Below are positions 14,055 through 39,682 of a stretch of 64,000 nucleotides of DNA, piece after piece. The stretch's first letter is position 1. Every line of letters starts with the position of its first letter. The notes below the pieces were generated by a model. It saw nothing but the letters and a program-made list of their open reading frames with translations. It ran no database searches and was not told where the DNA came from. Both the position numbers and the translations under genes were made by a program. This DNA is from Octopus bimaculoides (lineage: Eukaryota), in NCBI RefSeq assembly GCF_001194135.2, contig NC_068981.1, forward strand, positions 5,699,998 through 5,763,997. The letters are read 5' to 3'.

Positions 14055-14120
14055 TCATTCTGCATTTTCTGCAGCTTCTTCAGTTTTCTCAGCTGCTTCT
14101 TCAGGTTTGGCTTCTTTTGA
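14055..14120 (-). CDS. VAT1L: Terminal coding exon: SKEAKPEEAAEKTEEAAENAE*
   Basis: Acceptor gaaattttAG with a CTAAT branch-point-like motif just upstream; phase 0; TGA at 14055-14057. Glu/Ala/Lys-rich tail typical of VAT1L-like C-termini. Confidence 0.8.
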   Translation of the reverse strand, partial: SKEAKPEEAAEKTEEAAENAE

Positions 14121-14583: not shown

Positions 14584-16865
14584 NNNNNNNNNNNNNNNNN
14601 NNNNNNNNNNNNNNNNNNNNNNNNNNNNNNNNNNNNNNNNNNNNNNNNNNNNNNNNNNNNNNNNNNNNNNNNNNNNNNNNNNNNNNNNNNNNNNNNNNNN
14701 NNNNNNNNNNNNNNNNNNNNNNNNNNNNNNNNNNNNNNNNNNNNNNNNNNNNNNNNNNNNNNNNNNNNNNNNNNNNNNNNNNNNNNNNNNNNNNNNNNNN
14801 NNNNNNNNNNNNNNNNNNNNNNNNNNNNNNNNNNNNNNNNNNNNNNNNNNNNNNNNNNNNNNNNNNNNNNNNNNNNNNNNNNNNNNNNNNNNNNNNNNNN
14901 NNNNNNNNNNNNNNNNNNNNNNNNNNNNNNNNNNNNNNNNNNNNNNNNNNNNNNNNNNNNNNNNNNNNNNNNNNNNNNNNNNNNNNNNNNNNNNNNNNNN
15001 NNNNNNNNNNNNNNNNNNNNNNNNNNNNNNNNNNNNNATCGATCCCAAAATCTAATCAGTTTGTGCCAGTCACGAGGCCAAACATCTCTGAAAGTTTCAT
15101 CTGAATCCATCCAGCAGTTCTTGAGATATCTTGTCCATGGACAAACAAACAAATACAACTGAGAACAATACCTCTGCCTTTGCTAAAGCAGAGGTAATAA
15201 TAATAATAATAATAATAAGGGTTTCAAATTTTGCTCCACAAGGACAGTCATTTTGGAGGAGGGGAGGAGTTGATTACATCGACCCCAGTGTTCAACTGGT
15301 ACTTAATTTATTGACCCCAGAAGGATGAAAGGCAAAGTTGACCTCAGTGGAATTTGAACTCAGAACATAGCGATGGGTGAAATACCACTAAGCATTCTGT
15401 TCAGCATGCTAACAATTCTGCCAACTCATTGCCTTAATGATGATAATAATAATAATAATAATAACAAACCTTTCTATTGTAGGCACAAGGCCTGAAATTT
15501 GGGTGAAGGGATTAAGTTGATTATATCAACCCCAGTGCATAACTGGTACTTATTTTATCAACCCCAAAAGGATGAAAGGCAAAGTCGACTTCGGTGGAAT
15601 TTGAACTCAGAAAGTAACGACATGTGAAATACCACTAAGCGTTTTCTCCAGCATGCTAACGATTCTGCCAGCTCACCACATCATCATCATCATCATCGTT
15701 TAATATCTATTTTCCATGCTACCATGGGTTGGACGGTTTGACTGAGGTCTGAAGAGCCAGCGGTTGTGCCAAGCGCCAACCACTCGGAGAGGGTAGTGGG
15801 TGCTTTTTACGTGCCACCAGCATGGGGGGGGGGGGCAGTCAGGCAGTTCTGGCATTGGCAACATTTGGACAATACTTTTTATGTGCCACTGGCATGGGAG
15901 CCAGTCAGGGGACACCATTATAATAATAATGAGAGTTTCACATCTTGGCACGAAGTCTGAAATTTGAGGGGAGGGGGTAAGTCAATTATATTGACCCCCC
16001 AGTGATCAGCTGGTACTTATTTCATTGAAAGGACGATAGAAGTCAACAGTAAAGTCAATGAAAAGATGGATGAAATGATGCTCAGCATTTGGTCTGCTGC
16101 AGTAATAATTCTGTGTTTTAGCCGTCTGCTGTGTATTTGTGAATATTAATGAGGTGTATATTTCTGCATATTAACGTAGCCTATATTAGTTTAGTTGCAT
16201 TAGTAATTATAACTTTGCATAATTAAATACTGCTACTAGAAAAAGAAAAAAACAAAACAGGTCGTGATTGCAGACAGAGAGTGTTGCAGTCGTCGATCGG
16301 TTGAGCTGAAAGAAAGAAAATACTGACGTCTCACTTGATTGGTTACGAGAAGAAGAAATATGCATTCAAGTGTAAAAAAAAAAATATTTGTTCCAATAAT
16401 TCAGGTGTGAATCTGAAATATGTTAAACCATTCATGTAAACAAATGTTTTTGGTCCCTTTTTCCATACTTGATGGGTCAAATGGTGCTTTATTTGGGGCA
16501 GATTTTCTAGGACTGCATGGCCCTTCCTGTCATCAATCATCACTTATTTCCAAACAAAATTCTATGGCTAGATATGTCGTCATAGCACACCGGAAATTAA
16601 CGACACAGCTTGTATGACAGTGACAGCCATTTACAACTATAGAGTGATGTTAAGACAATGAGGCACACACGACAGGCTTCTTTCAGTTTCCAACTACCAA
16701 ATCCATTTACAAAGCTTTGGTTGGCCCAAGGCTATAGTAGAAGACATTTGCCCAAAGTGCCATGCATAGGAACAAAACCTAGAACTATGTGGTTGGGAAG
16801 CAAGTTACTTACCACACAGTCAAAATATTTCAGTGCAAAGAAAATTCATAACATTTCAATTAAAC

Positions 16866-19712: not shown

Positions 19713-19736
19713 TTCATCAGAGCCAGTGTCTGGTGG
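19713..19736 (-). CDS. VAT1L: Candidate microexon m4: PPDTGSDE
   Basis: 24 nt, no stop; acceptor ctctgtatttctAG, donor GTAAGT; phase 0/0; shares GACACTGG (DTG) with m3. Confidence 0.7.
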
Positions 19737-20082
19737 CTAGAAATACAGAGACAAGTGGCATCTATCAATACATACATAGAGAGAGAGATCTGCCCCACCT
19801 TTCTTTACAGTCAGCCATCCCCTACTCTCTTCTGCCAACCCCTCACTCCCTATCCACCCCAGTCTCTAGTCATCACCTACTCTTTCCAGCTTCCCCTTCA
19901 ACATATATTTAGCATTCTACCAAATTCCGCCGAGGTTGACTTTGCTTTCATCTTTTTGGGGTTGATAAATTAAGTACCAGTTGCGTACTGCAGTTGATCT
20001 AATCAACAGGCCCCCACCTCTCCAAAACTTTTGGGCCTTGTGCCTAGAGTAGAAAAAAATTTATTTATCATTCTGTCAGTGT

Positions 20083-20783
20083 GCATACACGGCAGAGTGA
20101 GAGTGCCCTGAGAGAAAAGTTGGGTATAAGAAGCATCAGTTCTGGTGTGCAAGAGAGATGACTGTGCTGGCATGGTCATGTGTTGCAAATGGATGAGGAC
20201 AGCTGTGTGAGGAAGTGTCACACTCTAGCAGTTAAGGGAACCTGCGGAAGCGGTAGACCCAGGAAAACCTGGGATGAGGTGGTGAAGCATGACCTTCCAA
20301 CATTGGGCCTCACCGAGGCAATGACAAGTGACCGAGACCTTTGGAGATATGCCGTGCTTGAGAAGACCTGGAAAACCAAGTGAGGCCATAACCGTGGCCT
20401 ATGCCAGTGCTGTGTAACCAGCCCATTTAAGAGTACCCTTCAATCATTGGACAAACTATGCTTGTGAAGACCTGTTGAGGTGAGTGAAACCACTGTCGTG
20501 GCCGATGACAGTACTGCCCGATTGGCACCTGTGCCAGTGGAATGTTAAAAACACCATTTTGGGCATGGTCATTGCAAGTGCCGCCAGACGGGCTCCCATG
20601 CCGGTGACACGTAAAAGCACTCACTACACTCTCAGAGTGGTTGGCGTTAGGAAGGGCATCCAGCTGTAGAAACACTGCCAGATCAGATTGGAGCCTGGTG
20701 CAACCTTCTGGCTCGCCAGCCCTTACTCAAACCGTCCAATCCATGCCAGCATGGAAAGCAGACGTTAAACGATGATGATGATT
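20083..20783 (+). mobile_element. 5'-truncated RTE-clade LINE 3' end with (GAT)n tail
   Basis: GHVLQMDEDSCVRKCHTLAVKGTCGSGRPRKTWDEVVKHDL, then a 3' UTR ending CCATGCCAGCATGGAAAGCAGACGTTAAACGATGATG, the tail shared with many SINEs here. Confidence 0.85.
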
Positions 20784-21478
20784 CCTAAGATGACAAGCTG
20801 GCAGAATTGTTAGCACATCATGCAAAATGCTCAGCAGCATTTTTCAGTTCAGCCAGTCTTTAGGTTCTGAGTTCAAATTCCACCAAGGTCGACTTTACCA
20901 ATCATCGTTTCAAGGTTGATAAAAAGAAGTACCGGTTACGTATTGGGGTTGATGTAATTGCCTCAATCCTTCCCTTGAAAGTGCTAGCCTTGTGTCAAAA
21001 CTTGAAACCTCATCCTACTCCTCACCCATTCTTGATCCCTAACTATACCTGACCCATCCCCTAGCCTCTATCATCCCACACTTTATTCTCTTTTCCTCTA
21101 CTCCCCTCATAACTTAAGGGTCCACCCTGTTACCTCGTCCCCACTATTTTCATTCTCTTCCCAACTCTGTCCTCGTCACCTCCGTCCTCTTCTAAAATGA
21201 AGGTAACCTTGTAGGTAGCTCTTTAACAGCAAGCAACATGGTCTGCTCTGGGCCCCTTTTCTTATATTCTAACCCCTTATCCCTTAAGGTACAGCTGCCT
21301 CTGTTGGTTTCTAATTTTAATGAAACCTAGAGAAGAACATTTGTTGAAAAATTGTTTAAACAGAATTTTCAAATGAGTGTCTGGACATTAATGGACATTG
21401 GGTGGGATGCCAATGACATTCGGGCTGAGCATTAATGGTCAAATGATTTATGTTGTATATAATGGAAATTGTTAGTGA

Positions 21479-21806
21479 CAAACCTGGGCACCAAACCATT
21501 AATCAACAAAGTTAACATTTTTGTTAACGATTTAACTGTGAAAATCATTATTGGACTAATTAACTGCTGTTAACTCAAGTCAACTTCCGTAACAGATTTG
21601 ATAGTTTTGGCTCTTTTTAAAGGTGGTTTTAGAGCAAAAACCCGATTGTTTTTTTTTCTATAATAAAAATTAATGTTAATGGTTTATCAATAACTTTTAT
21701 CACACTTTTAAAGAATTAACTGATTAACAGTTATCAAAGTTAATTTTTTGGTTAATGGATCAACAGTTAACGAAGTTAACTTTTCAATTGACAGTGCCCA
21801 CCTTTG
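21479..21806. mobile_element. hAT-type MITE
   Basis: TIRs CAAACCTGGGCAC / GTGCCCACCTTTG with subterminal GTTAAC repeats; 8-bp flanks GTTAGTGA / GTTAGTTA (7/8 match). Confidence 0.75.
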
Positions 21807-22073
21807 GTTAGTTAATGGTACTTGCAGTAAGTGAAGGAAAACTGAAGAATATAAGGAAATCTAGAAAAAGCTGGTTGTTACAAAAAGGAACACAGAAACA
21901 ATTCACATGGAGGATTATATTGCAGTCTTCACATGGAAGCCTTATGCTGCAGTTGCTCTATGGAGCATTATGCTACAGTTTTCACATGGAATGTCACATG
22001 CCAGCATCAACAATGCTAAAGTAATGATAGATTAGATCTTACGTCTTTGAAGTTTGGAGAAAATTTTTCTTAC

Positions 22074-22103
22074 CTCAGCACCAGTGTCTTCTTCACTCTT
22101 GGC
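22074..22103 (-). CDS. VAT1L: Candidate microexon m3: AKSEEDTGAE
   Basis: 30 nt, no stop; acceptor tttaattatttctAG, donor GAG|GTAAGA; phase 0/0; acidic like the terminal exon. Confidence 0.72.
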
Positions 22104-23131
22104 CTAGAAATAATTAAATATACAAAAAAATAAGATGAAACATTTTAAAATTTAATTTCAAAATTGGTGAAAAATGTAAATGTTTTTAAATGAAAATTAG
22201 AATATTTCTTCTGGAATTGAATTTAGTTATTTAGAATCTGAATAAAGTTGTTACACAAAGAATCTTCTTTGGTTAGTTATGGGGTTTTAATCATAACCAT
22301 CTAATTAATAGGTGTAAGACAATCATTGTAAAATATTAATTAATAAATGTGAGACAACCATGTTAAAATATAGGTTTCAAATTTTGGTACAAGGCCAGCA
22401 ATTTCAAGGGAGGCAGTAAGTTGATTACATCAACCTCCAGTACATGACTGGTACTTCTTTTGTCAACACCAAAAGGATGCAAAGTCCACCTTGACAGAAT
22501 TTGATCTCAGAATGTAAATACGGATGAAATGATGGTAAACATTTTGCCCAGCATGCTAACGATTCTGCCGGGTTTTTAACTATCTCATTTAGACTCCTCA
22601 GTTTAGGACTGCAGCCCATCTATATCGCAACAAAATGCAAAGGGCAGCTATAAAATTTTAACTGTGTCACCAGAAAAGCCATTAATTCCTATGAGAACAT
22701 GGTTCTATCAATTAGGTCAGCTATAGTGTAACCAAATAATAGCAGACTTGAATGCAAGTTTTGTGAATTTTCCTGTTAAAGGTTCTAGAAGTTTTGACTA
22801 AATGTTATAAAAGCTGAGAGATAGAACTCCCAAGTAGAACATCTGATGCTACAAAGAACCAGCCTGAAACTACGCTTAGTTCTGTGATATAAATTCCTTA
22901 TTTCAAAATGATTTAAATTGAAACCCATCAAAATTTCATATTTACATTCTAAGTGCCAGCTTAATAACAAAGTTATTTTACTAAATTCTTAGTTATTTTC
23001 AAAATTAAATGGAAAAAAAAAGACAGTGTATTCCGACAAAAATATGGTAGCAAAAGGGTTCATTTGTATATCTCTTCATTATTGATGACATTTTTAAAAA
23101 CCACTGTTTTGTATTTTTCTTCTGAACTTAC

Positions 23132-23161
23132 CACTGTTGTGGCACTGCTCTCAGATGGGGC
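23132..23161 (-). CDS. VAT1L: Candidate microexon m2: APSESSATTV
   Basis: 30 nt, no stop; acceptor ttttattgttgttccAG, donor GTAAGT; phase 0/0. Confidence 0.65.
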
Positions 23162-23501
23162 CTGGAACAACAATAAAATTCATTGTTATGAGAAGCAACA
23201 TAACCAAAAATACAAATGGAATTTGATACTATAACACATCTTAAAGACAATTTGATGGAATTTAATTCTAGAAAAACATCAAGATTTACAAAAGACAAAC
23301 TTTACACCCAATAAAATATTAAATTATCAATATTCTTGTCTAATAAAAGGAGAAAAGGTTAAGTCAAACCATGGCAGAATGTGAACTTAGAACATGAAGA
23401 TAGACAAAAAAACTGCTAAGTATTTTATCTAGAATGGTAACGATTTTGCCAGCTTAACACCTTAATAACAGTAATGAAAATAATAATAATAATCATAATA
23501 T

Positions 23502-23797
23502 GAAGGTTGTGGTCAATGAGGAGAGTAGACATGATACGAATAGTAATTGGTGTACTTGGAAGTATCAGCACTCAACGACTAAAATGGCTGAAAAAGATTG
23601 GTGCCAGTGTGAAGGTAGAACAGCTGCAAAAATCAGAATTGCTTGGAACTGCAAGAATTCTTGGCAGGGTTCTTGAAGCATGACCAGTAAAACAAGTGTC
23701 ACCTTAGTCTGCTGGCTGTGGACAGCTGACATTTTCCATCATACTCAGCAAAATAAGTTATGAGGTTTCACCACATAACAACAACAACAACAACAAC
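23502..23797 (+). mobile_element. R4-like LINE extreme 3' end with (AAC)n tail
   Basis: RLWSMRRVDMIRIVIGVLGS...QLQKSELLGTARILGRVLEA* (stop 23681-23683), the usual RLE-LINE C-terminus; (AAC)n at 23777-23797. Confidence 0.75.
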
Positions 23798-26700
23798 GAG
23801 CTTATTCTTTACAGTACTCGGGTACACTACAACTTGTCAGAAAAGGGTAAAAGAAGGGGACAGAAAGCAGCAGTGAGTGAAAGGAAGACAGTAAGGATAA
23901 CCAAAAGTGCATGCATGGTATAGAGAACACTGTGGTCAGGATGGGGTACTACATTCTGAGGGTACTATATTCTAAGGTACTATGGTCAAGGGTACTACAT
24001 TCATTGTATCCACCTCAGAACTTATCGACTGGCAGAAAGGCAAAGTGGGACTTGGGCTGGATTTGAACCAAGAACTTAAAGGTACTTAAACAAATATCAC
24101 AAGGTATTTTGTTCAGTGCTCTCTAACGACATCGTCCTTCACTAATTAATCCTGATGACCCAAATTGGCCAAGAGTCCACAGCATTCACATCAGCATGAC
24201 AGTAATCAACTCTGTTAACAAACCTCCATTAAATTTTTCTTTTTGAAATGACACAGAAATCATTCTTTCGAATAGATTTTAATCGCTCTTCGAGTTCATT
24301 GCAGGAAGTTTAATCATCATTATTCAATGTTCTTGTTCTCCATACTGGCATGGGTTGGACAGAATCTAACAAACCAGAGAACTGTGTTGAGCTCCAGTAC
24401 CTGCTTTGGCTTGGTTTCTATAGCTGGATGCCATTCCTAACATCAACCACTTTACAGAGTGTGGACTGGGTACTTTTTATGTGGCACCAGCACCAGTGAG
24501 GTCACCAAGTAACTTGCAAGGCAAGACCCCTTCCCTCAGCTAAGAGTAGCTTTGAAAGATGTGGCTTTGAGCCAGATGATGAGAGACTAACTCATTGGCT
24601 TTTAGACTGGTCATACTTGGCTCAAATATTCTACCCATTTTATGTTCAATGTGGCCAGATCTGGCCTCTCCTACCTACTCTACAATGTCATTCTAAAAAT
24701 ATACTAATACCTGCCCACGTCAGCGAAAATGAGTTCAAGAAGTGCTGCGTGTCCCACCCAGACTTAAAAAAATTTCTCACATCTCTTCTCTTCCCCACAT
24801 TTCCACTTCATGCACTACGCTTACCTCTCACTCCCCAATTCTGTCTTCTTGGCCCTGTGCCACTGTATCATTGTTATCTACTAGCTTCCAACCTGCATAA
24901 TCCACCCATGCCCTGTCTCACTGTATCACTGAACATGCCCAGTATTTTGCCATCATCTTTATCCTGCTGTCCCCCATTCTCTCTCCTTCTCCTGCACTTC
25001 CCTCATGTTGGATAACCATGTTTTTCCTTTCTGGCAGAGCACTTGCTTCTGTCTTCATTCCTGATCTCTCTTTCTCTCCTGCCAGGTAACCTTGTACCTC
25101 CTCTACAGCAACACACCTGTTTCTCTCCTCCTCATTCTTGATCACTCTATCTCTGTCTCTGTCTGTCTCTCTCTGTCACTTTGTCTCTCTCTCCCTCTCC
25201 CTCTCGCCAACCAGGTAATTATGTACTTCCTCTACACCAAGACACCTGTTTCTGTCTCTCTATCTCACTATAACTGTTCATCATCTGACACAAGATTACC
25301 TCCTCCAATGCCTCCCCTCCCCTCCCAAAAGAGTTTTTTCTTGTCTTGTTAGTTACTTGGTTACCCTGCCAGTGCTTGTGCCACATTAAAAGAACCCAGT
25401 CCACACTCATGGAATGGTTGGCATTTGGAACGGCATCCAGTTGTAATAACCTTACCAAAACTGACCTTGCCTGTGCTTGTCACATAAAAAGCACTAAGTC
25501 CACTCTGTTGAGTGGTTGGTGTTGGGAAGGGCATCCAGCTGTAAAAATCCTGTCAAAACAGTCACAGAAGTCTGGTGCAGGCTTCTGCCTGACCAGTTCT
25601 TGTCAAACCATCCCACCCATGCCAGCATGGAAGGTGGACGTTAAACGATGATGAAGATAATCATCATCATCAAAATCTCAAAGCTACAAGATAATGCAGG
25701 ATTAATTGAAAACAATAGGAATGAGTATTACATTTGATAAACTAATCTGAATGGTAAGGGATTAAAATCTGACATGGGAAGAGGAACCATTCAGGAATGG
25801 GAAAGAAAGTGTCAGGGTCCACCCTCAAGGCACAACAAGATGGAGAAAAAGAGGGACAAAGAAATGAGGATGGCTGGGTTTGCAGGAGTGTGAAAGGAGA
25901 GTGGTGGCCTGTTAGATTATAGGGGCAGAAAGTGAATGCAGTGAATGGTGGACATTGGTGGAGAGATGGTCAGTGGAGTATTTGAGAGAAGGTTAGAGGG
26001 GATGGGGGTGGAGAGCAGCCATAGGCACAGACATGGCTCTGTGGTAAGAAGTTTGCTTCCCAACCACATGGTTTTGGGTTCAGTCCCACTGTATGGCATC
26101 TTGGGGAAGTGTCTTTTACTATACCCTCAGGCTTACCAAAACCTTTTGAGTGGATTTGGTAGACAGAAACTGAAAGAGGTCCATTGTGTGCGTGTGTTTT
26201 TAAGTCCCTGTAACTTAGCAGTTCGGCAAAAGTGACTGATAGAATAAGAACCAGGCTTTAAAAATATATATATAAGCACTGGAGTCTATTTATTTGACTA
26301 GAATTCTTCAAGGCAGTGCTCTAGCATGGCCACAGTCTAATGATTGAAACAAGTAAAAGATAAGAAACAAGGAAATGATGTGAAGTAGGAGGAAATATGT
26401 AAATTTAGAACTTGCTCTTCCATACTTTTGTAACGACATAAAACCATTCTTCTTAGTCATTCGGAATAGTTTTAAAATCAATTTCCAATACATTTATTTG
26501 CTCAGAACTGGGATGTTGCTGTGATCAAGACCAGCTCAAGGTTCCGGTAACTTGGGTACCATGTGCCTGGTACCATCTGCTTTTTAGTCTACATTCTCAG
26601 TTTTCCTCCTTGTGAAAGTTTAAAAAAAAATATTCTTGTAAGGGCACCAAAGTCCAGTTTGCCCCGCCGGGCACCAGCAACTCTAGGGCCGGCCCTGGCT

Positions 26701-26969
26701 GTGCTGTTAGCTCATTGATAAAAAAAAATATTCTTTTCAACTGTAGGCACAAGGTCCGAAATTTTTTGGGGGAAGGAGACAGTCAATTAGATCAACCCCA
26801 GTATGCAACTGGTACTTAATTTATCAACCCCAAAAGGATGAAAAGCAAAGTCGACCTCAGCGGAATTTGAACTCGGAATGTAAAGACAAACGAAATACCA
26901 CCAAGCATTTCGCCTGGCACGCTAACGCTTCTGCCAACTTGCCAGCTGTTTTTGTTTTTTTTTAGAGCT

Positions 26970-27290
26970 ATACCAGCCCCTACACTGGATGTTACCATGT
27001 ACTGCCATAGCTTGGGATTCAAGGGACCATGGTTATTTAATACCTTGCCAAAACATCTGAAAGATTTGCATGGAATTGGGGTAGATGTTTTCAAGGAACA
27101 ATTTTCACCCGTTGTTGTCCAATGTCCTCAATAAAGAAACTCAAAAGAGGGCAGCAATGCTGAACTCCCTCTTTTACCAAAAGACAATCCCATAAGAATG
27201 GCCATTGAAAAGGTGATAACACTGGTGGTGTTCCAGCATGGCCACAGCCTTTGGGCTGAAATGCATAAAAGAATATTAATAAGTGAATAG
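26970..27290 (+). mobile_element. CR1/L2-group LINE 3' fragment
   Basis: YCHSLGFKGPWLFNTLPKHLKDLHGIGVDVFK resembles the conserved ORF2 C-terminus of CR1/L2-type LINEs. Confidence 0.55.
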
Positions 27291-29137
27291 ATAGATGAAT
27301 AAACAAAGAAATGCCATCTGTTAGAAATTTATTTCTTATGGATTGGATGCGGAGAGAGATTAGTCAAAGAGAAGACAAGCGTTAGGGGAGGTTGGTGACA
27401 AGATCTGAGGGTTGTGTGTGTTGGAGCAGGTGCTGATAGAGTCCATATTGATATAAGGTCACTTGGGATTGGAGGAAACCATCTTGAGAGAAAAGAAAAC
27501 CAACTTGTATTTGTAAAGGATTAAAACGATTAAGACAGAGAGAGAGGGAGAGAGGGAGGAGAGAGAGGGAGGGAGAGAGGGAGAGAAAGAGAGAGGTCGT
27601 TTGTTGAAGGAGAGCAAAAAATATGAAGTTGATCGGTTTGGGTGATATTGATTCTTTACGTATTGATTTAGGGAGAAAGAAAAGTAAGTCTATGGTCATA
27701 GAACTTAAAACCTCAGTCAAATATTCTATAGACACAAGTTTGGTTGTGTGGTAAGAAGCTTGCTTCCCAACCACATAGTCCCAGGTTCAGTCCCACAGCA
27801 TGGCACCTTGGGCAAGTGTCTTCTACTACATCCTCAGGACAACCAAAGCTTTGTGAGTGGATTTGGTAGACAGAAACTGAAAGAAACTCGTCGTATATAT
27901 GTGTGCGTGCGTGTGTGTGTTTGTCCCCCCACCATCACCTGACAATTGATGCTGGTGTATTTGCGTCTCTGTAACTTAGTGGTTTCAGCGAAAGAGACTG
28001 ATAGAATAAGTACCAGGCTCACAAAGAATGAGTCCTGGGGGCGATTTGTTCGACTAAAGGCAGTGCTCCAGCATGGTCACAGTCAAGTGACTGAAACAAG
28101 TAAATGAATAAAAAAATACTTGAGGAATTGTAAACCGAAAGCCAGGAATCATCATGGAATGTCTGGTGTCAATGTCTGGTCATGGAGAGTAATATGACTT
28201 AGAAACAGGAAGGGCATCCAGCAGCAGAAAAATTGCCTCAACAAATTCTGTCCGACCCATGCAACCATAGAAAAATGTAAGTTAAAATGACGATTATGAT
28301 GATAATGTTCCATGCTGGAATGGGTGAAACAGTTTGACCGAATCCAACAGATTCAAGGACTACATTGTTCTCCCAAGTCTGCTTTGGCGAGGGTTTTACA
28401 ACTGGATGCTCTTCCTAATACCAACCACTTTACAGTATGGGCTGGGTGCTTTTTGTTTTTTATTATTACATGGCACCAACATTAGTGAGGTTGTCAAGTA
28501 ACCCACAAGACTAAGACCCCTTTTGAGTAAGGCTATAGTAGGGAGAGAGGCAGCTTTATGCTGTGGAATGAGAGAAGGGGTCAGAACCGAACAGGTTTGT
28601 TGCTGTGAAGTAATAAGGATGAGGGCTGGAAAGAGAGATAAAAATTGTAGTGATGAGGTGCCAGGGTGGATACTGAAAGTCAGTAGAAGTGATTAGGGAT
28701 GGGGAGAACAAGGAATGTGGGTAAGTAGAGGTTGGAAGTGTGTAAAGGAGATGGTTAGAGAAAAGGAGTGAGTGAGAGGTGAATATAATGAACAAGTGTT
28801 TCAGGATGGTTGGGGAAGAGTAGGTGACAACTGTAAAAATTGGGCAGAAGACATTGTACATTGTTTTAGCAACATCAGGTCACATTGGAATGATAGTGTC
28901 ATACTGACATTTTTGGACAGCCGCTGATTACATGCATGTGTGTATGTGTCTACATATGAGTGGATCTATGCACAAGTGCAGATGCACATATGTTCCTGTG
29001 CATGTGTGTGTGCATGTATAGCATATCTGCATTTGTGCATGGGCAACTGTATGTCTGCATGTATGTGTTTGTGGGTATGTTAGTGCAAATACATATGCAG
29101 GCATATATGTATGTGCAAATATATATATATGTATATA

Positions 29138-29630
29138 TAAGTATATGATTTAAGTTATAACACAAAGTTCAACAAATTCAATCATATTTTACATAAATGG
29201 ATGAGATTAGATGTTAATGTGGATTGAATTATTTCTTATTCAATTCGGTAGACGATCGTTTTGTACGGAAGGACAATAAATTTGTTTTAAGAATCCGAGT
29301 TGTCAAAGAGTACTCAGTAGCACAATAAGAAAAAAATAATAAAAACTTAAAGAAAAAAGGTAGACTTAAGAATTACATTGGTATTGTGTTCTTACTAATT
29401 TTTACTGTGTAATTGTTCTAGGAGTCATGTCTGTTTAGTCAAGTTTTAAATAGATATGACTCCGAGAACAATACCCATGTAGTTCTTAAGTCTAGCTTTT
29501 TCTTTATTAAGTTCTTGTTTTTTCTTATTGTACTCAGATTCTGAAAATGAATTTATTGTCTTCCTGTACATTTATGTAAAATATGATTGAATTTGTTGAA
29601 CTTTGTCTTATAACTTATATCATATACTTA
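29138..29630. mobile_element. Fold-back element / TA-flanked MITE, about 490 bp
   Basis: Outer arms TAAGTATATG...ACATAAATG match the reverse complement of 29567-29630; nested paired segments continue inward; about 60-nt insertion in the left arm only. Confidence 0.8.
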
Positions 29631-29761
29631 ACATACTTATATAACCTTTCATATCTACACCATTTTACACCAGTAAATCCAAAGTAAAGTATGAAGAATC
29701 AACATTAGCAATCTTTTGGAAATTACTCCAATTAAAGGACGAATCCTCATTCAACCCTTGT

Positions 29762-29794
<33 letters not shown>

Positions 29795-30224
29795 NNNNNN
29801 NNNNNNNNNNNNNNNNNNNNNNNNNNNNNNNNNNNNNNNNNNNNNNNNNNNNNNNNNNNNNNNNNNNNNNNNNNNNNNNNNNNNNNNNNNNNNNNNNNNN
29901 NNNNNNNNNNNNNNNNNNNNNNNNNNNNNNNNNNNNNNNNNNNNNNNNNNNNNNNNNNNNNNNNNNNNNNNNNNNNNNNNNNNNNNNNNNNNNNNNNNNN
30001 NNNNNNNNNNNNNNNNNNNNNNNNNNNNNNNNNNNNNNNNNNNNNNNNNNNNNNNNNNNNNNNNNNNNNNNNNNNNNNNNNNNNNNNNNATATATATCTA
30101 TGTATAAATGTATTTATGTATGACCAATGTATGCAATACATATATAAGTGTGTGTGTGTGTGTGTGTATGTGTGTGTGTGTGTGTGTGCGTGTCCAGCTA
30201 TGTATTGCAGCAAGAAAAACTTAC

Positions 30225-30254
30225 TTTCACTTCATCAGCGGCCTGGGATTTTCC
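30225..30254 (-). CDS. VAT1L: Candidate microexon m1 of the VAT1L-like tail: GKSQAADEVK
   Basis: 30 nt, no stop; acceptor ttttcttttttaatAG, donor GTAAGT; phase 0/0. No transcript evidence available here. Confidence 0.7.
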
Positions 30255-31979
30255 CTATTAAAAAAGAAAAATAAGCAACAAAGGCACAGATAAAGCAAAC
30301 AAACAAAAAAGTTTATGTTGGAATTTATTTTTTGAGTAACTCAAAAATTAAAAATATCCGAACCAATAAAGTAATTAAAGAACGTTGCTAATTACGTTAT
30401 TTTGAAGAATATATTCCTTTAACCCTTTAACATTGAAACTGGCCATTCCTGGCCAAAATATTCTACCTGTTTTATGTTCAAACCAACCAGATATGGCCTC
30501 TCATACCTATCCTGTAATGTCATTCAAAAAATGACTCAGTAGTTAGAGCGTCGGGCTCACAATCATGAGTTAGCGGGTTCGATTCTTGGACCAGGCTATG
30601 TATTGTGTCCTTGAGCAAGACCCTATTTCACGTTGCTCCAGTTCTCTGAGCTGTAGAAACGAGTTGTGACATCACTGGTGCCAAGCTGTATCAGCCCCTT
30701 TGCCTTTCCCTTGGATAACATCAGTGGCATGGTTCCAAGCCAACCATAGCTTTATGAGTGGATCTGGTAGATCATCATCATCATTTAACATCCTTTTTTT
30801 CCATGCTGGCATGGGTGGGATGGTTTGACAAGAGCAAACATGCTAGAGGGCTCCACCAGGCTCCAATGCCAACCATTTCTACAGAATGTATTGGCTGCTT
30901 TTTACATGAATACATAAAAGGAAGTGAAACAGAAATGAAAACAAACACGAATGCGATGAGCTTTTCAGCCTCCACTTACCGAATCCTTTCACAAGGCTTT
31001 GGTCAGTTTAGGGTCAAAGTAAAAAACAGATGACCAAGCTGTTGCATTGTGGGAATGAACCCAAAACCATGTGGTTGGGAAGCAAACTTCTTAGCTATAC
31101 TTGCTTTTAAAACATGGGTTAGAGACTATTTTTGAAAAGATCTTAGAAAGTTTTTCTTTAAATCTTCAGTAATTATACGTATTTTGCTATTTTGCAGAAC
31201 TATCAACAAAAAAGACTTAAATAACAGCATTAAAAAAATTGTTTTGTAAGATAATGAGGTTATAATTAATTAAACAATTTTAAAATAACGAAAACAAAAC
31301 AAAACCGAACCAAAAACAAAAATTTTTTTAAAAAACCTTAAGTGAATCCAAACAATTTAAATAAAAATATTCCAACAGATTTTTTAAAACTCTTTTACAA
31401 ATTTAGACATTACTGTCTTGGAGATTCTATGCCATGTCTGTTCTGTTTAGCAATTTCTTTATATCAAGGAATCTGATTCTATTTTCATTATCATCATTTA
31501 ATGTCTGCTTTCCATACTGGTATGAGTTGGATGGTTTGACTGAAAACTGGTAAGCCAGGGGGCTGCACCAGGTTCCAATCTGATCTGGCAAGGTTTCTAC
31601 AGCTGGATGCCCTTCTTAATGCCAACCCCTTTGAGAGTGTAGTGCGTGCTTTTTACGTGCCACCCGCACAGGTATCATTGACCCCACACCAGCATTGGCC
31701 ACGACTATGGTCTCACTTGGCTTGACAGGTCTACACAAGCATAGTATATCACCAAAGGTCCTGGTCACCTGTCACTGCCTCCATGAGGCCCAACGCTTGA
31801 ATGGTGCCTTTTATGTGTCCCCAGCACATGTGCCAGTCAGACAGCACCGGCATCAGCTATGACTATTCAAAAAAAGCTTTGAACACATGGAACCAAAAGA
31901 CTAGCCTTTGAAATGCCATGGAATATGGATAGGGGCTTTTTTTTAACCCCTCTTTATTTTGTTCTTACAGAATTCTTAC

Positions 31980-32057
31980 CTTTGGCTCAACAGTCGGGTC
32001 TAAAATAATTTTACCAATATTTTTGCGGTCATGAAGTCGTTGCATGGCTTCTGCAAT
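31980..32057 (-). CDS. VAT1L: VAT-1 homolog-like exon: IAEAMQRLHDRKNIGKIILDPTVEPK (end of MDR domain)
   Basis: 78 nt; acceptor aaacAG, donor GTAAGA; phase 0/0. MDR C-terminal motif xNIGKxxL. Confidence 0.92.
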
Positions 32058-33184: not shown

Positions 33185-33379
33185 GTCTTCAAAACAAGCA
33201 ACTTGGTCGATGACTGGTTTAATGATTCCATCAGTGTACAACTTGAACAGTTTGTCCATTTGGCTTTGAATATAAGCATGTTGGTTGTCACGGAACAATA
33301 ACTGACGCAGCTGGAACCCTGCAAGGAACTTGTTGTCGTCGTACAACTTCAGGGGACTAATTTTATCAACTTGCCACCA
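33185..33379 (-). CDS. VAT1L: VAT-1 homolog-like exon: WWQVDKISPLKLYDDNKFLAGFQLRQLLFRDNQHAYIQSQMDKLFKLYTDGIIKPVIDQVACFED
   Basis: 195 nt (65 codons); acceptor ctatttcAG, donor GTAAGT; phase 0/0. Lies within ORF 32972..33427. Confidence 0.94.
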
Positions 33380-33521
33380 CTGAAATAGGGGAAGAAATAG
33401 AAAAAATAGGGGACAAAAACACATCAAAACTTGTTTAAGAAGCTATCAACATATATTTTTATGTATTATCATTATCAGCTATGTGCCACATGCACGCACA
33501 CACACACACACACACACACTC

Positions 33522-33599
<78 letters not shown>

Positions 33600-34019
33600 A
33601 AATGGAGATTGGGATGTTAATAAGTATTTATTATTAACAGCAAATTAATCATCATCCCTTACAGCTGTTTCAGTTAATACTCAGTAGATTAATTAAATAT
33701 TAAATTTATATGATCATTCATCACATCGTTTAACGTCCGTTTTCCATGCTGGATGGGTTGGATGGTTTGACGGGGGCCTGGGAAGCCAAGAGGCTGCACC
33801 AGGCTCCAATCTGAAATGGCAGAGTTTCTACAGCTGGATGCCCTTCCTAATGCCAACCACTCCGAGAGTGTAGTGGGTGCTTTTATGTGCCACCAGCACG
33901 AGGGCCAGTCGGGTGGTCAGAAGCCCAATATACCCATCATGTCTACCTAACTGATAAGGATACACCAGGTACGTGCAACACAACCATATGTGCAGGACAT
34001 ACTGGCCTCACATCAAGAT

Positions 34020-35492
34020 AAACAAAAGCCCCACGGTTATATTTTCTGATTATTTTTTTGTTTTTTCTTACCTTTTACTTGTTTTAGTCATTAGACTGCG
34101 GCCATGCTGGGGCACCTTAAAGAATTTTTAGTTCAACGTATCGACCCCAGAATTCTTTTTTTTCCTTTTTAATTGCAGTTATTAGACTGCAGCCATACTA
34201 AGGCACCATCTTGAAGAATTTTTAGTCGAATGTAGCGACCCCCAGAATTTTTTTTAATGATTTTCAACCAGAGGGTATATCCACATGCTAGAAACAACAG
34301 CCAAATCTCTTGAAATTTTTTTGTAACCCCTTGGTTTTTTTTCTTCACTAAAAATCTTTTTGTTTGTTTCAGTCATTGGACTGTGGTCATTCTGGGGCAC
34401 TAACTTAAATTTTTAGTTGCAGAAAAAAAAAAAATCAGCATTTTAAAATATATATTTAAAGTCTTTTGTTTTCTTCTCTCAGTGCTTACAGATCAATGAA
34501 AATAAGTTGACCTTTTGAACTTTCTCCAGCAGTTGAAGGTCTAACAGAAGGCTAGTCATTCAAACGTACTTCTTATCGTTTGCCTAAATAGGGAAATGGG
34601 TGTTTCTCCATAAAAATGACAAATTCTGGTTTTTGTGAAGAAAAAACATGCCAGAGACATGTGTAATATTGACTTTCATTGTCTGTGTGTATATGTGGTC
34701 AGTCAAACGTGGTCAGTCAAACGTGGTCAGTCAAACATACTTCTTATTGTTTTTATGTTTCTACACATTTCATGAAGTAAATGCTTTCCCTTTTGTTAGA
34801 ATTCGGACAATATGTACATTGAGTAGTAAAGAGTCTTGTGTTCTGTTATTCTATTATTGATGTTGATTTATTTTCAAACTTTAAAATTATTCTAAAAACG
34901 AGGAAACACACAAAACATACCATTGTGAGGGACATAGATGTTTTGACACCGTTCTTCGATTGAATATATTTTGTTTACTTAAAAATTGGAATTTTGGAAA
35001 ATAATTTTTGTTTTTTTTTTACAACCACAATTTCCGTTTGTGTTTACATGAAATTATAAAAAAAAAATTTGTAAGATTTAGCTGTTATTTCTAGCATGTG
35101 GAGAGACCTAAAAAGTTTCAAGAGATTAAACCTTCTAGGTTTAATTTCATGCACTGGTTGAAAATCATCTGAAAAAAATTCTGGGGTTGATACAATTGAC
35201 TAAAAGTTCTTCAAAGTGGTGCCCCAGCATGGCTGCAGTCCATTGACTGCAACAAGTAAAAAGAAAAACCAAAATGAATTATGTCACAAAAGTGGTTTTG
35301 ATCAAGCTTAAAAAAATTTCTGGGTTCCATTCAGCCATCTAAAAATTCTTCAAGGTGGTGCCCTTGCATGGCTGGACGCACTCTAATAACTGTAACAAGG
35401 AATTAAAAAAAATTCTGGGATCGGTACATTCAACTAAAAATTCTAAAAAAAAAAAAAATTACTGCAAAATATAACCGTGGAGCTTTTGTCCG
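34020..35492. mobile_element. Composite inverted-repeat element, about 1.47 kb, with SINE-derived units in both arms
   Basis: ACAAAAGCCCCACGGTTATATTTT at left pairs with AAAATATAACCGTGGAGCTTTTGT at right; about 300 bp of left arm (34020-34325) matches the reverse complement of 35060-35490. Confidence 0.7.
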
Positions 35493-35774
35493 AGGGGGCT
35501 TTTGTCTAGACCCCAAACTGCACATGACTTTGCAAGGCAAGGCTCGGAATTTTCTTCAGGTTGACCATCCTGCTTAAAAGATCCCTGAATAAGGTTCGTT
35601 TAAGGATGTTGAATGAAACACCCATGTTTGCAGAGATGAATTATCCAAACCCCAAAGAATTCTTCTCAACATATGGCTATGATGCTCCCCCACTACTTCT
35701 GCTCTTGATCAGAGATGCACATATCGTCAGCCACCAAAGGACATGCTCAACTGGTTAAGGTCAAATAACTGACA

Positions 35775-36046
35775 AGCAAATCTGTGGTATTAAGCAGAAA
35801 TATTTGCTGTAGATCATCTTTTTATACCAAGACAAAACAATGTACATGATAACACTTCCAATCAGTTAAGATCAGAAACCATGAGAGCCACTGCTTGGTA
35901 CTGCATCAGGGCATTAGCAAATCTGTGGTATTGAGCAGAATATTTGCTGTGGCCCATCTTTTTTATACCAAGACAAAACATGTACATGATAACACTTCCA
36001 GTCAGTTAAGATCAGAAGCCATGAGAACCACTGCCTGGTCCTGCAT
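35775..36046. repeat. Tandem duplication of about 140 bp inside a dispersed repeat
   Basis: AGCAAATCTGTGGTATT...CTGCAT at 35775-35906 and 35916-36046. Confidence 0.9.
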
Positions 36047-37191
36047 AATCATTTTATGTCTTTTCAATACCCTACAAATCTGAAGTATTCTATGAACATT
36101 CACAAGTTTAGATATAAGGGAGAGAACTGCGTAATTCTCTTCTTTGAGGTGAAATAAAATTCTGTTTCATGTCTGCAAGATGAGTCTCTAATATGTTTAC
36201 CAATTGGATTTCTGTGAGAGATACTCAACAAGAGTAATGAGTAATTGTTGGCCTGGCTGTTGCATTTCAACCTGGACATTCCACAAATTGTTTGTTTCTT
36301 TTCTTAGATTAATTACAGCCAACACAAACTGTATGGAGCCTAAACTTAACCGTTATGATAAAATGGTTATATAATAAACAAAACAAAACGGCTGAGGCCG
36401 TACGTTTTCAAACCAAAGCACAATCCTGCAGAAACCAAAGATGGCCAACTGAAAGTGATTATTTTATGACATGATATTCAAATATCTTATCGTCAGATCT
36501 AGCTTTGATTCATTTCTAAATATATCGTTATTAATATCACCTTCTATTTCATTATTTTAAAAAGGTCATATCTTCGGGGCCAGGTAGAGATTCTTAATAG
36601 ACAACCTCACAATTTATGAAATATTTCATCATCATCATTTAACGTCCGTTTTCCATGCCGGCATGGGTTGGACGGCTTGACTGGAGCTGGCAAGGCCAGG
36701 TGCCACACCAGGTACCATTGTCTGTTTTGGCACGATTCCTACGACTGAATGCCCTTTCTGATGCCAACCACTTTACAGAATGCACTGGGTGCTTTTTATG
36801 TGGCACCAACAGGGTCACCAAATACTTTGCAAAAGAAAAAAAAAAAAAAGCAAAGTTCCCTTAATTAGGGGTGGGAAGTAGTATTGGGGGTTGGCTTTGT
36901 GCCATTTGAAAGATTAAAGGTATAGAGGGGACAGATGTAGAGGTCCTGTTGTAGATACAGATTCTATAGAACCAAAACAACTAACATTACATAAATATTA
37001 ATATGACAAAACACTAACAGATGACTAGACTTCAACTGTTTGGACCGAGACCTGCTGTCATTATTTAACAGTAACGACATTCATTTATTGTCCCGTGGGT
37101 CAAATTTAATATTATGCTGTTTTTGCTCTGTGCAGGATGTCAAGAACGTTTTGGAAATGTCCAAATTTAGTTAGATTACCCAAAAGGATTA

Positions 37192-37372
37192 CCAGATATA
37201 CTCAGCTATAAGTCACACTTTTTCCCCTGAAACGTTTACCTAAAGTTGGGGATGTCACTTATAAGTGCATCCTATAACTTCTAGTCAGATCAATGCTAAA
37301 ATTCCTGATTTGAACCTTTAATTCGGGGGTGCGTCTTATAGGTGGGGGCGTTTTATAGTCAAGTATATACGG
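37192..37372. mobile_element. Tc1/pogo(Tigger)-like MITE
   Basis: TA|CCAGATATACTCAGCTATAAG ... TTATAGTCAAGTATATACGG|TA; TA on both sides. Confidence 0.72.
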
Positions 37373-37766
37373 TATACTAAATTAGAAATTATACAACACA
37401 AAAAAAACTACTGGGGTACATTTAGTATTTTTTTCAACATCTCTGGTTTAGCAAGAATATACCATATAGAAAGAATATATTACACATCCACACACATACA
37501 ATCAAGATAGTAATAAGACAAAGAAATCGTTTAACACATCTTTAACGATCAGTTAAAGTTGTTTCTGTACCAACTCTGCTTGCAATACCAATTTACACGA
37601 AAGTTCAAAGGGAAAATTTTACATAATGCTTGCAGTTTTAGACATTAGAGTGGCACTTCATCAGAGGCACCAAATCCATAACCAGCATGCACCTCATGTA
37701 ATCCATGGAGGTGCTGCCCAACATGTCCGTTAAAGTCATCAGCCACAAGAACCAAGTGTCTGTCTA

Positions 37767-38197
37767 TTAGAAAATTACTATTTTTAAATCTCACAACGTG
37801 AGATATTCAGTAACAGTACTTTGGAGTAAAGATTGTTTGCCAACATAACCTGGCAGTCCTGGTTTAGGACGAATGTTGCTGTAATTTAGCCCCAGGAGAC
37901 ATCGTCTCCAGCTGGCTATACAACACAATCTGTCCTTATATTTTTGAACAAGTGAATCTAGCACCCCCACTCAGCCCAAAACAATATCTGTGTATCACAA
38001 TTTCCAGGTTATTCCCCCTCATCAGCACAGAATAATTGCTCGGCTAGAGGTGGTGCTGCCAAATTCCCGTTTGAAAATGTAAGGACACAGATTGTGTCAT
38101 ATAGCCAGCTGGAGACGATGTCTCCTGGGGCTAAATTACAGCAACATTCATCCTAAACCAGGACTGCCATGTTATGTTGGCAAACAATCTTTACTAC
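37767..38197. mobile_element. Long-TIR MITE family copy 1 (also 40800-41047 and 63501-63809)
   Basis: About 120-bp arm GTAAAGATTGTTTGCCAAC...CTGGCTATA inverted at 38080-38197; shared terminus TTAGAAAATTACTATTTTT. Confidence 0.82.
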
Positions 38198-38761
38198 AAG
38201 TGCCTGTCATTTGTTGTTGGGGTAATCTCCAGAAGGACCTCGTAAAAATGGCCCTTGTGCTACGGCCATATATAGTTTAGAATCGATTCTCATTGCATGA
38301 ATGTTTATATAATGAATATGTTGATTAAAATGTACATGTATATGAATGTAATATTAATCATCATCGTTTAACGCCCGTTTTTCATGCTGGTATGGGTGGG
38401 ACAGTTTGACTGAGGTCTGGAGAGCTCCAATCTGATCTGGCAAGGTTTCTACAGCTGGATGCCCTTCCTAATGCCAACCACTCCGAGAGTGTAGTGGGTG
38501 CTTTTTATGTCACCTGCATATTAATAATAATTAAATATTACAATATATATATATATATATATGGACACATGTAAGCCATGTTAATAACTAATTACGAGAC
38601 CTTAGATTCAACTAACTCTCTCCCCATCTATCATACAACGGGTTTATTGAACTTTGAACCTAACTAAAATGTAAGACTATCAAATTATTGAACTTTTTCT
38701 TCTTCCTGTTTTTTTCCAAACACTTTCCTTCTCTCTATTCCCTTTTAACTTTGCTTTCTCC

Positions 38762-38838
38762 GTTCTGATGATGTCTATCAACTGCAACGAGGTAAATACA
38801 TATTTACCCCAGCCTGATATACGGAAACAGCTGTAAAC
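38762..38838 (+). ncRNA. Candidate hammerhead ribozyme with extended stem II (decayed Penelope terminal repeat)
   Basis: GTT CTGATGA ... (TATCA/TGATA, GGTAAATA/TATTTACC) ... GAAAC AGCT GTA AAC; palindromic ACAGCTGT stem III and GUA triplet; stem I only 3 bp and stem II base weak. Confidence 0.5.
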
Positions 38839-38959
38839 TTACTCTAACATATTCCCATCTTAAGTAATTAATGGCTTTATAACAACACCAAAGACCCACT
38901 TCTCATTGTTATTTATTTATTTCTCCATTTTGTTATCGTCTTTATATATATATTTATTT

Positions 38960-39575: not shown

Positions 39576-39626
39576 TATTCTACTGTAGAAGAAGTCTATA
39601 TGGAGGTATCAAGTTTAGAAACTCAC

Positions 39627-39682
39627 TGATTTTGCGAAACTGAAGAAACTTTTAGTTTCTCCAGTAACCACACTGGAAGTTC
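39627..39682 (-). CDS. VAT1L: VAT-1 homolog-like exon: (G)TSSVVTGETKSFFSFAKS
   Basis: 56 nt; acceptor tcttttgcAG, donor GTGAGT; phase 1 to 0. VTGETKSFFSFAKS is a VAT1L-type signature segment. Confidence 0.9.

What the first reader, a model, noticed from the sequence alone, without database searches (positions are those of the whole stretch)
19713..30254. Array of four frame-preserving microexons building the acidic tail of a VAT-1-like protein
Seen: between the last MDR-domain exon and the stop exon lie four stop-free, phase-0 exons of 30, 30, 30 and 24 nt (GKSQAADEVK, APSESSATTV, AKSEEDTGAE, PPDTGSDE). Each has a pyrimidine-rich AG acceptor and a GTAAG donor, and their composition matches the terminal exon. 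None is in the ORF track. Established: symmetric microexons often encode disordered, neurally regulated segments, and VAT-1 was first found on electric-organ synaptic vesicles. Inference: independent skipping could give up to 16 tail isoforms differing in charge and Ser/Thr sites. The N-gaps at 14584-15037 and 29795-30089 could hide further microexons.
Basis: partly seen in the sequence, partly recalled or inferred. Interest (0 to 1): 0.78.

Follow-up and report, generated by a model that had tools for sequence, protein, structure and literature searches.

The report
Annotated short tail exons of octopus VAT-1
The four tiny exons are real, conserved coding exons that build the acidic, disordered tail of the Octopus bimaculoides VAT-1 (VAT1L-like) protein, but they and four of their splice combinations are already in the public RefSeq annotation, so the finding is correct and ordinary.

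Summary
On the minus strand, four phase-0 exons of 30, 30, 30 and 24 nt lie at exactly the stated coordinates. Each has a YAG acceptor and a GTAAG donor. They sit between the last MDR-domain exon (32057-31980) and the stop exon (14120-14055).

Splicing the 12 exons in the window reproduces residues 72-437 of RefSeq XP_014779831.1, O. bimaculoides VAT-1 homolog-like isoform X1, without a mismatch. RefSeq also holds X2 (lacks PPDTGSDE), X3 (lacks GKSQAADEVK) and X4 (lacks both). The same four isoforms are annotated in O. sinensis.

In a gapless Argonauta hians locus the four exons have the same lengths and order. They are the only colinear conserved islands in the 18-kb interval.

The N gap at 29795-30089 is intronic and flanked by microsatellites. 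It is still unread in the newer O. bimaculoides assembly. Exon order across it matches Argonauta, and the protein joins match two other Octopus annotations.

The claim of 16 isoforms is only partly supported: four combinations are annotated, from exons 1 and 4. Neural regulation was not tested.

By-product: cuttlefish transcripts show six tail isoforms that differ by whole 30-nt tandem units. Lottia encodes its tail in a single exon.

The parts
31980..32057 (-). Last MDR-domain exon (IAEAMQRLHDRKNIGKIILDPTVEPK), 78 nt, phase 0 at both ends, donor gtaaga
   Evidence: 91% nt identity to Argonauta L002 40607-40684
31965..31979 (-). Read-through of that donor: VRIL then stop. This would give a tail-less isoform if the intron is retained or an early polyA site is used
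   Evidence: O. vulgaris CAI9715720.1 (P0129) ends EPKVRIP
30225..30254 (-). ME1, 30-nt phase-0 cassette exon GKSQAADEVK; skipped in RefSeq isoforms X3 and X4
   Evidence: Argonauta orthologue L002 42496-42525, same length; 79.5% identity over an 83-nt colinear block
29795..30089 (.). Assembly gap inside the ME1-ME2 intron, flanked by (CA)n and (TA)n; content unread
23132..23161 (-). ME2, 30-nt phase-0 exon APSESSATTV; present in all RefSeq isoforms
   Evidence: Argonauta L002 45242-45271
23105..23131 (-). 27-nt extension of ME2 through an alternative downstream donor (gtggtt), encoding VSSEEKYKT
   Evidence: identical peptide in O. vulgaris CAI9715718.1 (P0126)
22074..22103 (-). ME3, 30-nt phase-0 exon AKSEEDTGAE; present in all RefSeq isoforms
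   Evidence: Argonauta L002 46371-46400, 24 of 30 nt identical
19713..19736 (-). ME4, 24-nt phase-0 cassette microexon PPDTGSDE; skipped in RefSeq isoforms X2 and X4
   Evidence: Argonauta L002 59155-59178, same length
14584..15037 (.). Assembly gap inside the last intron, 464 nt upstream of the stop exon; content unread
14055..14120 (-). Coding part of the terminal exon, SKEAKPEEAAEKTEEAAENAE plus TGA
   Evidence: 84% identity to Argonauta L002 60458-60545
33185..60497 (-). Upstream MDR-body exons of the same gene: 60497-60368, 44427-44212, 42573-42431, 41568-41465, 39682-39627, 33379-33185. The exon(s) for residues 1-71 lie outside the window

Best explanation
The window holds most of the Octopus bimaculoides gene for 'synaptic vesicle membrane protein VAT-1 homolog-like', a VAT1L-type MDR oxidoreductase-fold protein, on the minus strand.

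After the last exon of the folded domain, four very short phase-0 exons (30, 30, 30 and 24 nt) and a 63-nt terminal coding segment encode a 59-residue acidic tail. The tail is rich in Ser, Thr and Ala and is intrinsically disordered.

All the junctions are phase 0, so any exon can be left out without changing the frame. The first exon (GKSQAADEVK) and the fourth (PPDTGSDE) are used as independent cassette exons, giving four tail lengths (437, 429, 427 and 419 aa). The two middle exons are essentially constitutive. Leaving out ME4 removes three net negative charges and two Ser/Thr. Leaving out ME1 removes ten residues with no net charge.

Shown here: the exons, their phases, their conservation and the annotated isoforms.

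Inferred: that the isoform choice tunes the length, charge and phosphorylation capacity of a flexible tail, and that it is tissue-regulated.
For: - Exact coordinates, splice sites and phases.
- The spliced window equals residues 72-437 of XP_014779831.1.
- The window is 100% identical to GCA_001194135.2 CM046601.1.
- Isoforms X1-X4 in O. bimaculoides, and the same four in O. sinensis, differ exactly by ME1 and/or ME4.
- Argonauta hians has all four exons as separate AG...GT exons of identical length and order.
- These exons are the only colinear conserved blocks between the last MDR exon and the stop exon.
- The motif count exceeds chance.
- Pfam ADH_N and ADH_zinc_N_2 match.
- The best PDB hits, VAT1L and VAT1, cover query residues 34-375 (VAT1L) and 31-376 (VAT1), so the tail lies outside the solved fold.
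- The AF2 model has pLDDT about 31-33 and no secondary structure for residues 380-429.
- Tail composition and per-exon charge.
- Cuttlefish transcripts show the same principle with more units.
Against: - The octopus isoforms are predicted (Gnomon) or pipeline models. I could not inspect junction reads.
- No octopus transcript contigs turned up in the Logan-derived proteins (cluster members come only from NCBI and UniProt; one search returned nothing).
- The two assembly gaps remain unread.
- Tissue specificity and any functional effect of the tail variants are untested.
- Peptide conservation between Octopus and Argonauta is modest for ME1 and ME2 (5 of 10 residues each). The constraint may be on length and composition rather than on sequence.
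Confidence: 0.9

Rival explanations
1. One reading: all four microexons are skipped independently, giving up to 16 tail isoforms, under neural-specific (SRRM3/4-type) microexon control.
For: - All junctions are phase 0.
- ME1 and ME4 are independent cassettes.
- O. vulgaris models omit ME3, or ME3 and ME4 (P0131, P0126).
- Sepia esculenta transcripts show six combinations of 30-nt units.
- TGC lies 23-24 nt upstream of ME1 and ME4, the two skipped exons, but not within 25 nt upstream of ME2 or ME3. The ME1 TGC is also present in Argonauta.
Against: - No annotated isoform in three Octopus species skips ME2, and none skips ME3 cleanly.
- The two O. vulgaris models lacking ME3 use alternative splice sites, and one of them shifts the frame.
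- The TGC upstream of ME4 is not conserved in Argonauta.
- Three of the four exons are 30 nt, above the 27-nt limit used for the classical neural microexon programme (my own knowledge).
- No tissue data were available.
Confidence: 0.15
2. All four exons are constitutive. The X2-X4 isoforms are gene-prediction artefacts caused by failure to align reads to very short exons.
For: Short-read aligners often miss exons of 30 nt or less, which can create apparent skipping. The RefSeq records are labelled PREDICTED.
Against: - The same four combinations were produced independently for O. bimaculoides and O. sinensis.
- Only ME1 and ME4 are affected, although ME2 and ME3 are just as short.
- De novo assembled cuttlefish transcripts, which do not depend on alignment to a genome, show analogous clean 30-nt differences.
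Confidence: 0.07
3. The four segments are chance splice-like motifs in an intron, and the true tail comes from the terminal exon alone.
For: Short open AG...GT segments do occur by chance. Repeat-derived decoys exist in the same interval, for example 26169-26137 and 20663-20625.
Against: - The count is enriched over expectation.
- Length and order are conserved in Argonauta, where these are the only conserved islands in the interval.
- The segments are included in protein models from four octopod species.
Confidence: 0.01

Closest known systems
RefSeq gene models XP_014779831.1 to XP_014779834.1 (O. bimaculoides VAT-1 homolog-like isoforms X1-X4), with the equivalent O. sinensis XP_029644056/65/74/82 and O. 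vulgaris CAI97157xx models
   Same: Identical. The window's 12 exons give residues 72-437 of X1. X2, X3 and X4 differ by omission of ME4, ME1 or both.
   Different: Nothing differs at the sequence level.
Human VAT1L (PDB 4A27) and VAT1 (PDB 6K9Y, 6LHR)
   Same: The same two-domain MDR fold aligns over query residues 34-375 (VAT1L, E 1e-140) and 31-376 (VAT1, E 3e-100). The GGVG nucleotide-binding loop is conserved, with IAGGVGQA aligned to SAGGVGQA.
   Different: The solved chains end where the octopus tail begins. The exon structure of the vertebrate tails was not examined here.
Other invertebrate VAT-1 homologues, for example Lottia gigantea LOTGIDRAFT_219806
   Same: The intron positions in the MDR body are the same. 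An acidic, low-complexity tail follows the ILDP..PK motif.
   Different: In Lottia the whole tail after the last MDR exon is a single terminal exon (L014 6386-6454), with no intervening short exons. The subdivided tail was seen here only in cephalopods.
Cuttlefish (Sepia esculenta) VAT-1 homologue transcripts from Logan assemblies
   Same: The tail is built from 10-residue (30-nt) units. Isoforms differ by whole units.
   Different: There are six tandemly repeated, clearly paralogous units (GAA...GAACCTGAA) plus larger blocks. In octopus the four exons show no detectable similarity to one another. Without a Sepia genome locus, splicing cannot be separated from repeat-number alleles.
Neural microexon programme (SRRM3/SRRM4 eMIC-dependent exons of 3-27 nt)
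   Same: The exons are short, symmetric and frame-preserving, and lie in a gene named after a synaptic vesicle protein. TGC lies upstream of the two alternative exons.
   Different: Three of the four exons are 30 nt. Neural specificity was not tested. The TGC is conserved for only one of the two exons.

Membership tests
VAT-1 / VAT1L subfamily of medium-chain dehydrogenase/reductase (MDR) proteins | N-terminal GroES-like ADH_N domain plus a Rossmann-type ADH_zinc_N(_2) domain | tested here: met
   PF08240 scores 61.5 bits (cut-off 23.5) and PF13602 scores 60.9 bits (cut-off 27).
VAT-1 / VAT1L subfamily of medium-chain dehydrogenase/reductase (MDR) proteins | Closest characterised relatives are VAT1L/VAT1 rather than other quinone oxidoreductases | tested here: met
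   4A27 VAT1L scores E 1e-140 and 6K9Y VAT1 scores E 3e-100. The next hit, quinone oxidoreductase 4DUP, scores E 7e-39.
VAT-1 / VAT1L subfamily of medium-chain dehydrogenase/reductase (MDR) proteins | Glycine-rich dinucleotide-binding loop (A/S-x-G-G-V-G) | tested here: met
   IAGGVGQA aligns to SAGGVGQA of VAT1L. G184, G185, V186 and G187 are invariant in 25 homologues.
VAT-1 / VAT1L subfamily of medium-chain dehydrogenase/reductase (MDR) proteins | Association with synaptic vesicles or membranes, and enzymatic or ATPase activity | not testable with these tools
   This needs biochemistry or localisation experiments.
Microexon (3-27 nt in the strict definition; up to 30 or 51 nt in looser ones, from my own knowledge of the literature) | Exon length at or below the limit | tested here: inconclusive
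   ME4 is 24 nt and meets every definition. ME1-ME3 are 30 nt and meet only the looser definitions.
Alternatively spliced cassette exon | Transcripts both with and without the exon, with the frame preserved | tested here: met
   Met for ME1 and ME4 at the level of annotated isoforms in two species. All exons are phase 0. Junction reads were not inspected. For ME2 there is no model that skips it. For ME3 only two irregular O. vulgaris models do.
Neural SRRM3/4 (eMIC)-dependent microexon | Neural-specific inclusion | not testable with these tools
   No tissue-resolved read data were available.
Neural SRRM3/4 (eMIC)-dependent microexon | UGC motif close upstream of the 3' splice site | tested here: inconclusive
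   TGC lies at -23 (ME1) and -24 (ME4), and there is none within 25 nt of ME2 or ME3. It is conserved in Argonauta for ME1 only.

The most novel reading that the evidence does not exclude
The C-terminal tail of the cephalopod VAT1L-type protein is a lineage-specific array of short symmetric cassette exons that keeps expanding. It is absent in the limpet Lottia, has four exons in octopods, and has at least six tandemly duplicated 30-nt units plus larger blocks in cuttlefish. On this reading the exons are combined in a tissue-dependent (possibly neural) way to set the length and charge of a disordered tail on a synaptic-vesicle-associated protein.
Probability: 0.3. Interest if true: 0.45.

Novelty: already known. 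Interest (0 to 1): 0.22.

Why it matters
It matters little as a discovery. The exons and four isoforms are already in RefSeq, and alternative short exons that encode disordered tails are a familiar pattern.

The check does show that the first-stage reader can recover exons of 24-30 nt, correctly and to the base, from raw sequence.

The comparative by-product is a modest but concrete example of how a disordered tail can be diversified by adding short symmetric exons. The series runs from a single-exon tail in Lottia, to four exons in octopods, to a tandem array of 30-nt units with many isoforms in cuttlefish. It could be followed up with public RNA-seq data.

Tried and rejected
- A 44-residue single-exon query found only one unrelated fragment.
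- A tail-only protein search returned nothing, because no candidate shared enough 5-residue words. No partial octopus transcripts could be recovered that way.
- The newer O. bimaculoides assembly carries the same N gaps, so the gaps were not resolved.
- The O. vulgaris and O. sinensis loci were not delivered because the genes exceed 100 kb. The shorter O. vulgaris product P0129 is not on record.
- A test for similarity among the four octopus exons and their flanks found nothing above shuffled controls. Recent tandem duplication in octopus is therefore not supported.
- A scan for further tail-like (acidic, non-hydrophobic) open AG...GT segments in the 18-kb interval, and in the Argonauta interval, found none beyond the known exons and sub-fragments of them, apart from a trivial 12-nt hit (KRTE, 21191-21180).
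- Literature searches for VAT-1/VAT1 with microexons in octopus found no paper on this locus.
- The first coding exon was not found in 60.5-64 kb. It lies outside the window.
Full report
**What is in the sequence**

- ME1: 30254-30225, GKSQAADEVK.
- ME2: 23161-23132, APSESSATTV.
- ME3: 22103-22074, AKSEEDTGAE.
- ME4: 19736-19713, PPDTGSDE.

Each follows a pyrimidine-rich YAG acceptor and precedes GTAAG.

A tblastn run with a human VAT1 sequence recalled from memory was used only as a lead. Inspection of splice sites then placed the rest of the gene on the same strand. The exons are:
- 60497-60368
- 44427-44212
- 42573-42431
- 41568-41465
- 39682-39627
- 33379-33185
- 32057-31980, the last MDR exon, ending ...EPK|gtaaga
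- 14120-14055, the terminal coding segment, SKEAKPEEAAEKTEEAAENAE*

All junctions from 31980 onward are phase 0. The exon or exons for the first 71 residues are not in the window.

**Is it more than chance?**

- The filter finds only six hits on both strands of the whole window. Three of them are ME1, ME3 and ME4.
- Relaxing it to at least 12 of 20 pyrimidines and to GT[AG]AG donors adds ME2 and a few candidates that derive from a dispersed repeat.
- Against the rest of the window and against Markov-simulated sequence, the 17.9-kb interval holds 3 strict hits where 0.3-0.5 are expected. With the GTAAG donor kept and only the pyrimidine threshold relaxed, it holds 5 where 0.8-0.9 are expected (P about 0.01 and 0.002-0.003).

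On motifs alone the case is moderate.

**What it is**

A search with the spliced product returned 'synaptic vesicle membrane protein VAT-1 homolog-like isoform X2 [Octopus bimaculoides]' at 98% identity. It also returned an Argonauta hians orthologue and transcript-sized Logan contigs from other cephalopods.

The cluster listing shows four RefSeq isoforms for O. bimaculoides:

| Isoform | Accession | Length | Tail exons |
|---|---|---|---|
| X1 | XP_014779831.1 | 437 aa | all four |
| X2 | XP_014779832.1 | 429 aa | lacks PPDTGSDE (ME4) |
| X3 | XP_014779833.1 | 427 aa | lacks GKSQAADEVK (ME1) |
| X4 | XP_014779834.1 | 419 aa | lacks both |

The same four forms exist for O. sinensis, and the corresponding models exist for O. 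vulgaris.

The 12 exons I defined in the window translate to residues 72-437 of X1 without a mismatch. The window is 100% identical to GCA_001194135.2 chromosome CM046601.1. The finding is therefore correct, and it is already annotated.

**Conservation**

In the gapless Argonauta hians locus (L002) the four exons are separate AG...GT exons of 30, 30, 30 and 24 nt in the same order.

A sensitive blastn of the 18.5-kb tail region against that locus finds exactly six colinear blocks: the last MDR exon, ME1, ME2, ME3, ME4 and the stop exon. Every other match is microsatellite or dispersed repeat.

Exon identity is 70-80% at the nucleotide level. Similarity fades to background within about 30 nt of flanking intron. 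Peptide identity is 5/10 for ME1, 5/10 for ME2, 8/10 for ME3 and 6/8 for ME4. Length is strictly kept.

**The assembly gap**

The gap at 29795-30089 lies in the ME1-ME2 intron, 130 nt after the ME1 donor, between (CA)n and (TA)n runs. The gap at 14584-15037 lies in the last intron. Both persist unchanged in the chromosome-scale O. bimaculoides assembly, so their content could not be read.

The O. vulgaris and O. sinensis loci were not delivered, and a shorter model was not on record.

Because both gaps are intronic, frame is not at issue. Order and orientation across them match Argonauta. The X1-type proteins of O. sinensis and O. vulgaris, and the Argonauta protein, carry no extra residues at these joins. 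A constitutive hidden exon is therefore unlikely, but a rarely used one cannot be excluded.

A scan of the readable intron for further acidic, non-hydrophobic open AG...GT segments found nothing beyond the known exons and sub-fragments of them, apart from a trivial 12-nt hit (KRTE, 21191-21180).

**How it most likely works**

The protein has the ADH_N and ADH_zinc_N_2 domains. It aligns over residues 34-375 to human VAT1L (4A27, E 1e-140) and over 31-376 to VAT1 (6K9Y, E 3e-100), with the GGVG nucleotide loop conserved.

The tail starts where the solved chains end. Its properties are:
- 18 acidic and 6 basic residues out of 59
- 12 Ser/Thr
- only 2 hydrophobic residues
- pLDDT about 31-33 and no secondary structure in an AlphaFold2 model

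The exon phases allow any exon to be dropped without changing the frame. The annotated isoforms use ME1 (net charge 0) and ME4 (net charge -3, two Ser/Thr) as independent switches.

It is inference, not a shown result, that these switches tune the length, charge or phosphorylation of a flexible tail, or that they are neural.

One weak lead: TGC sits 23-24 nt upstream of ME1 and ME4 and is absent upstream of ME2 and ME3. Only the ME1 motif is conserved in Argonauta.

**Other isoform signals in the window**

- Reading through the 31980 donor gives VRIL-stop. This matches an O. vulgaris model that ends EPKVRIP.
- A 27-nt extension of ME2 to a gtggtt donor (23131-23105) encodes VSSEEKYKT, as in O. 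vulgaris CAI9715718.1.
- An acceptor 22 nt upstream of ME4 gives the frame-shifted end of CAI9715719.1.

**Comparative by-product**

Logan transcript contigs come from one run documented as Sepia esculenta larvae (SRR19578112; PMC10141105) and from other runs that are 99.5-100% identical to it in the shared CDS. They carry six different tails. These differ by whole 30-nt units of a six-unit tandem repeat (EKAKSDSEPE, ESTKSETEPE, ESVETDSEPE, EISPPDTEPE and so on), or lack the whole 180-nt block.

The units share no 31-mers by eye (visual inspection), so assembly collapse is unlikely. Without a Sepia genome locus, however, exon skipping cannot be formally separated from repeat-number alleles.

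A second decapodiform species shows four tail forms.

In the limpet Lottia gigantea the MDR-body introns are in the same positions, but the tail is a single terminal exon. Other invertebrate homologues also have acidic tails of varying length. The acidic tail is therefore old. Its subdivision into short cassette exons was seen here only in cephalopods.

In octopus the four exons show no detectable similarity to each other.

**Verdict**

It is partly right about combinatorial use: four annotated combinations, not sixteen. It is untested on neural regulation.

The locus is already annotated, and no paper on it was found. Interest is low. The cephalopod-wide expansion of the tail array is the only part that might merit follow-up.

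Noticed in passing
window 31965-31979 (minus strand): If the donor after the last MDR exon is not used, the frame runs VRIL and stops. This would give a protein with no acidic tail. An O. vulgaris model (CAI9715720.1) ends EPKVRIP at the same place.
   Followed up: partly
window 23105-23131 (minus strand): An open 27-nt extension of ME2 runs to a second donor (gtggtt) and encodes VSSEEKYKT. The peptide is identical to the one in O. vulgaris CAI9715718.1, which then skips ME3 and ME4.
   Followed up: partly
window 19737-19758 (minus strand): An alternative acceptor 22 nt upstream of ME4 is used in O. vulgaris CAI9715719.1. It shifts the frame. In O. bimaculoides the reading would be PLVSVFLATRHWL-stop.
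   Followed up: partly
window 30255-30279 and 19737-19761 (minus strand): TGC lies 23-24 nt upstream of ME1 and ME4, the two exons skipped in RefSeq isoforms. None lies within 25 nt upstream of ME2 or ME3. Only the ME1 motif is also present in Argonauta.
   Followed up: partly
L003 (1778-1957), L004, L006-L013 (Sepia esculenta transcript contigs): Six tandem 30-nt units (GAA...GAACCTGAA) lie in the tail-coding region. Six transcript forms differ by whole units or lack the whole 180-nt block.
   Followed up: partly
L014 5915-6454 (Lottia gigantea): The intron positions in the MDR body match those of octopus. The tail is one terminal exon after a 390-nt intron, with no short exons.
   Followed up: yes
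window 625-651, 17377-17391, 20625-20663, 26137-26169, 47652-47666 (minus strand); 24424-24495, 27838-27852 (plus strand): Copies of a dispersed SINE-like repeat carry splice-site-like borders and short open segments (ADQSF/ADQSL, FLSTK.T.K, LDA.PN.NH). They act as decoy exon candidates in motif scans.
   Followed up: no
window 61033-61720 (plus strand): Open reading frames with a retrotransposon-like end (…GRGRPRKTWDK…) lie inside the large intron upstream of the 60.4-kb exon. This is probably a LINE fragment.
   Followed up: no
whole gene: The closest solved relative is human VAT1L (4A27, E 1e-140), not VAT1 (6K9Y, E 3e-100). The octopus gene is better described as VAT1L-like.
   Followed up: yes
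window, all eight N runs: All the N gaps present in this window reappear at identical lengths in the locus fetched from the chromosome-scale assembly GCA_001194135.2. Within this locus that assembly carries the same contigs and closes none of the gaps.
   Followed up: yes
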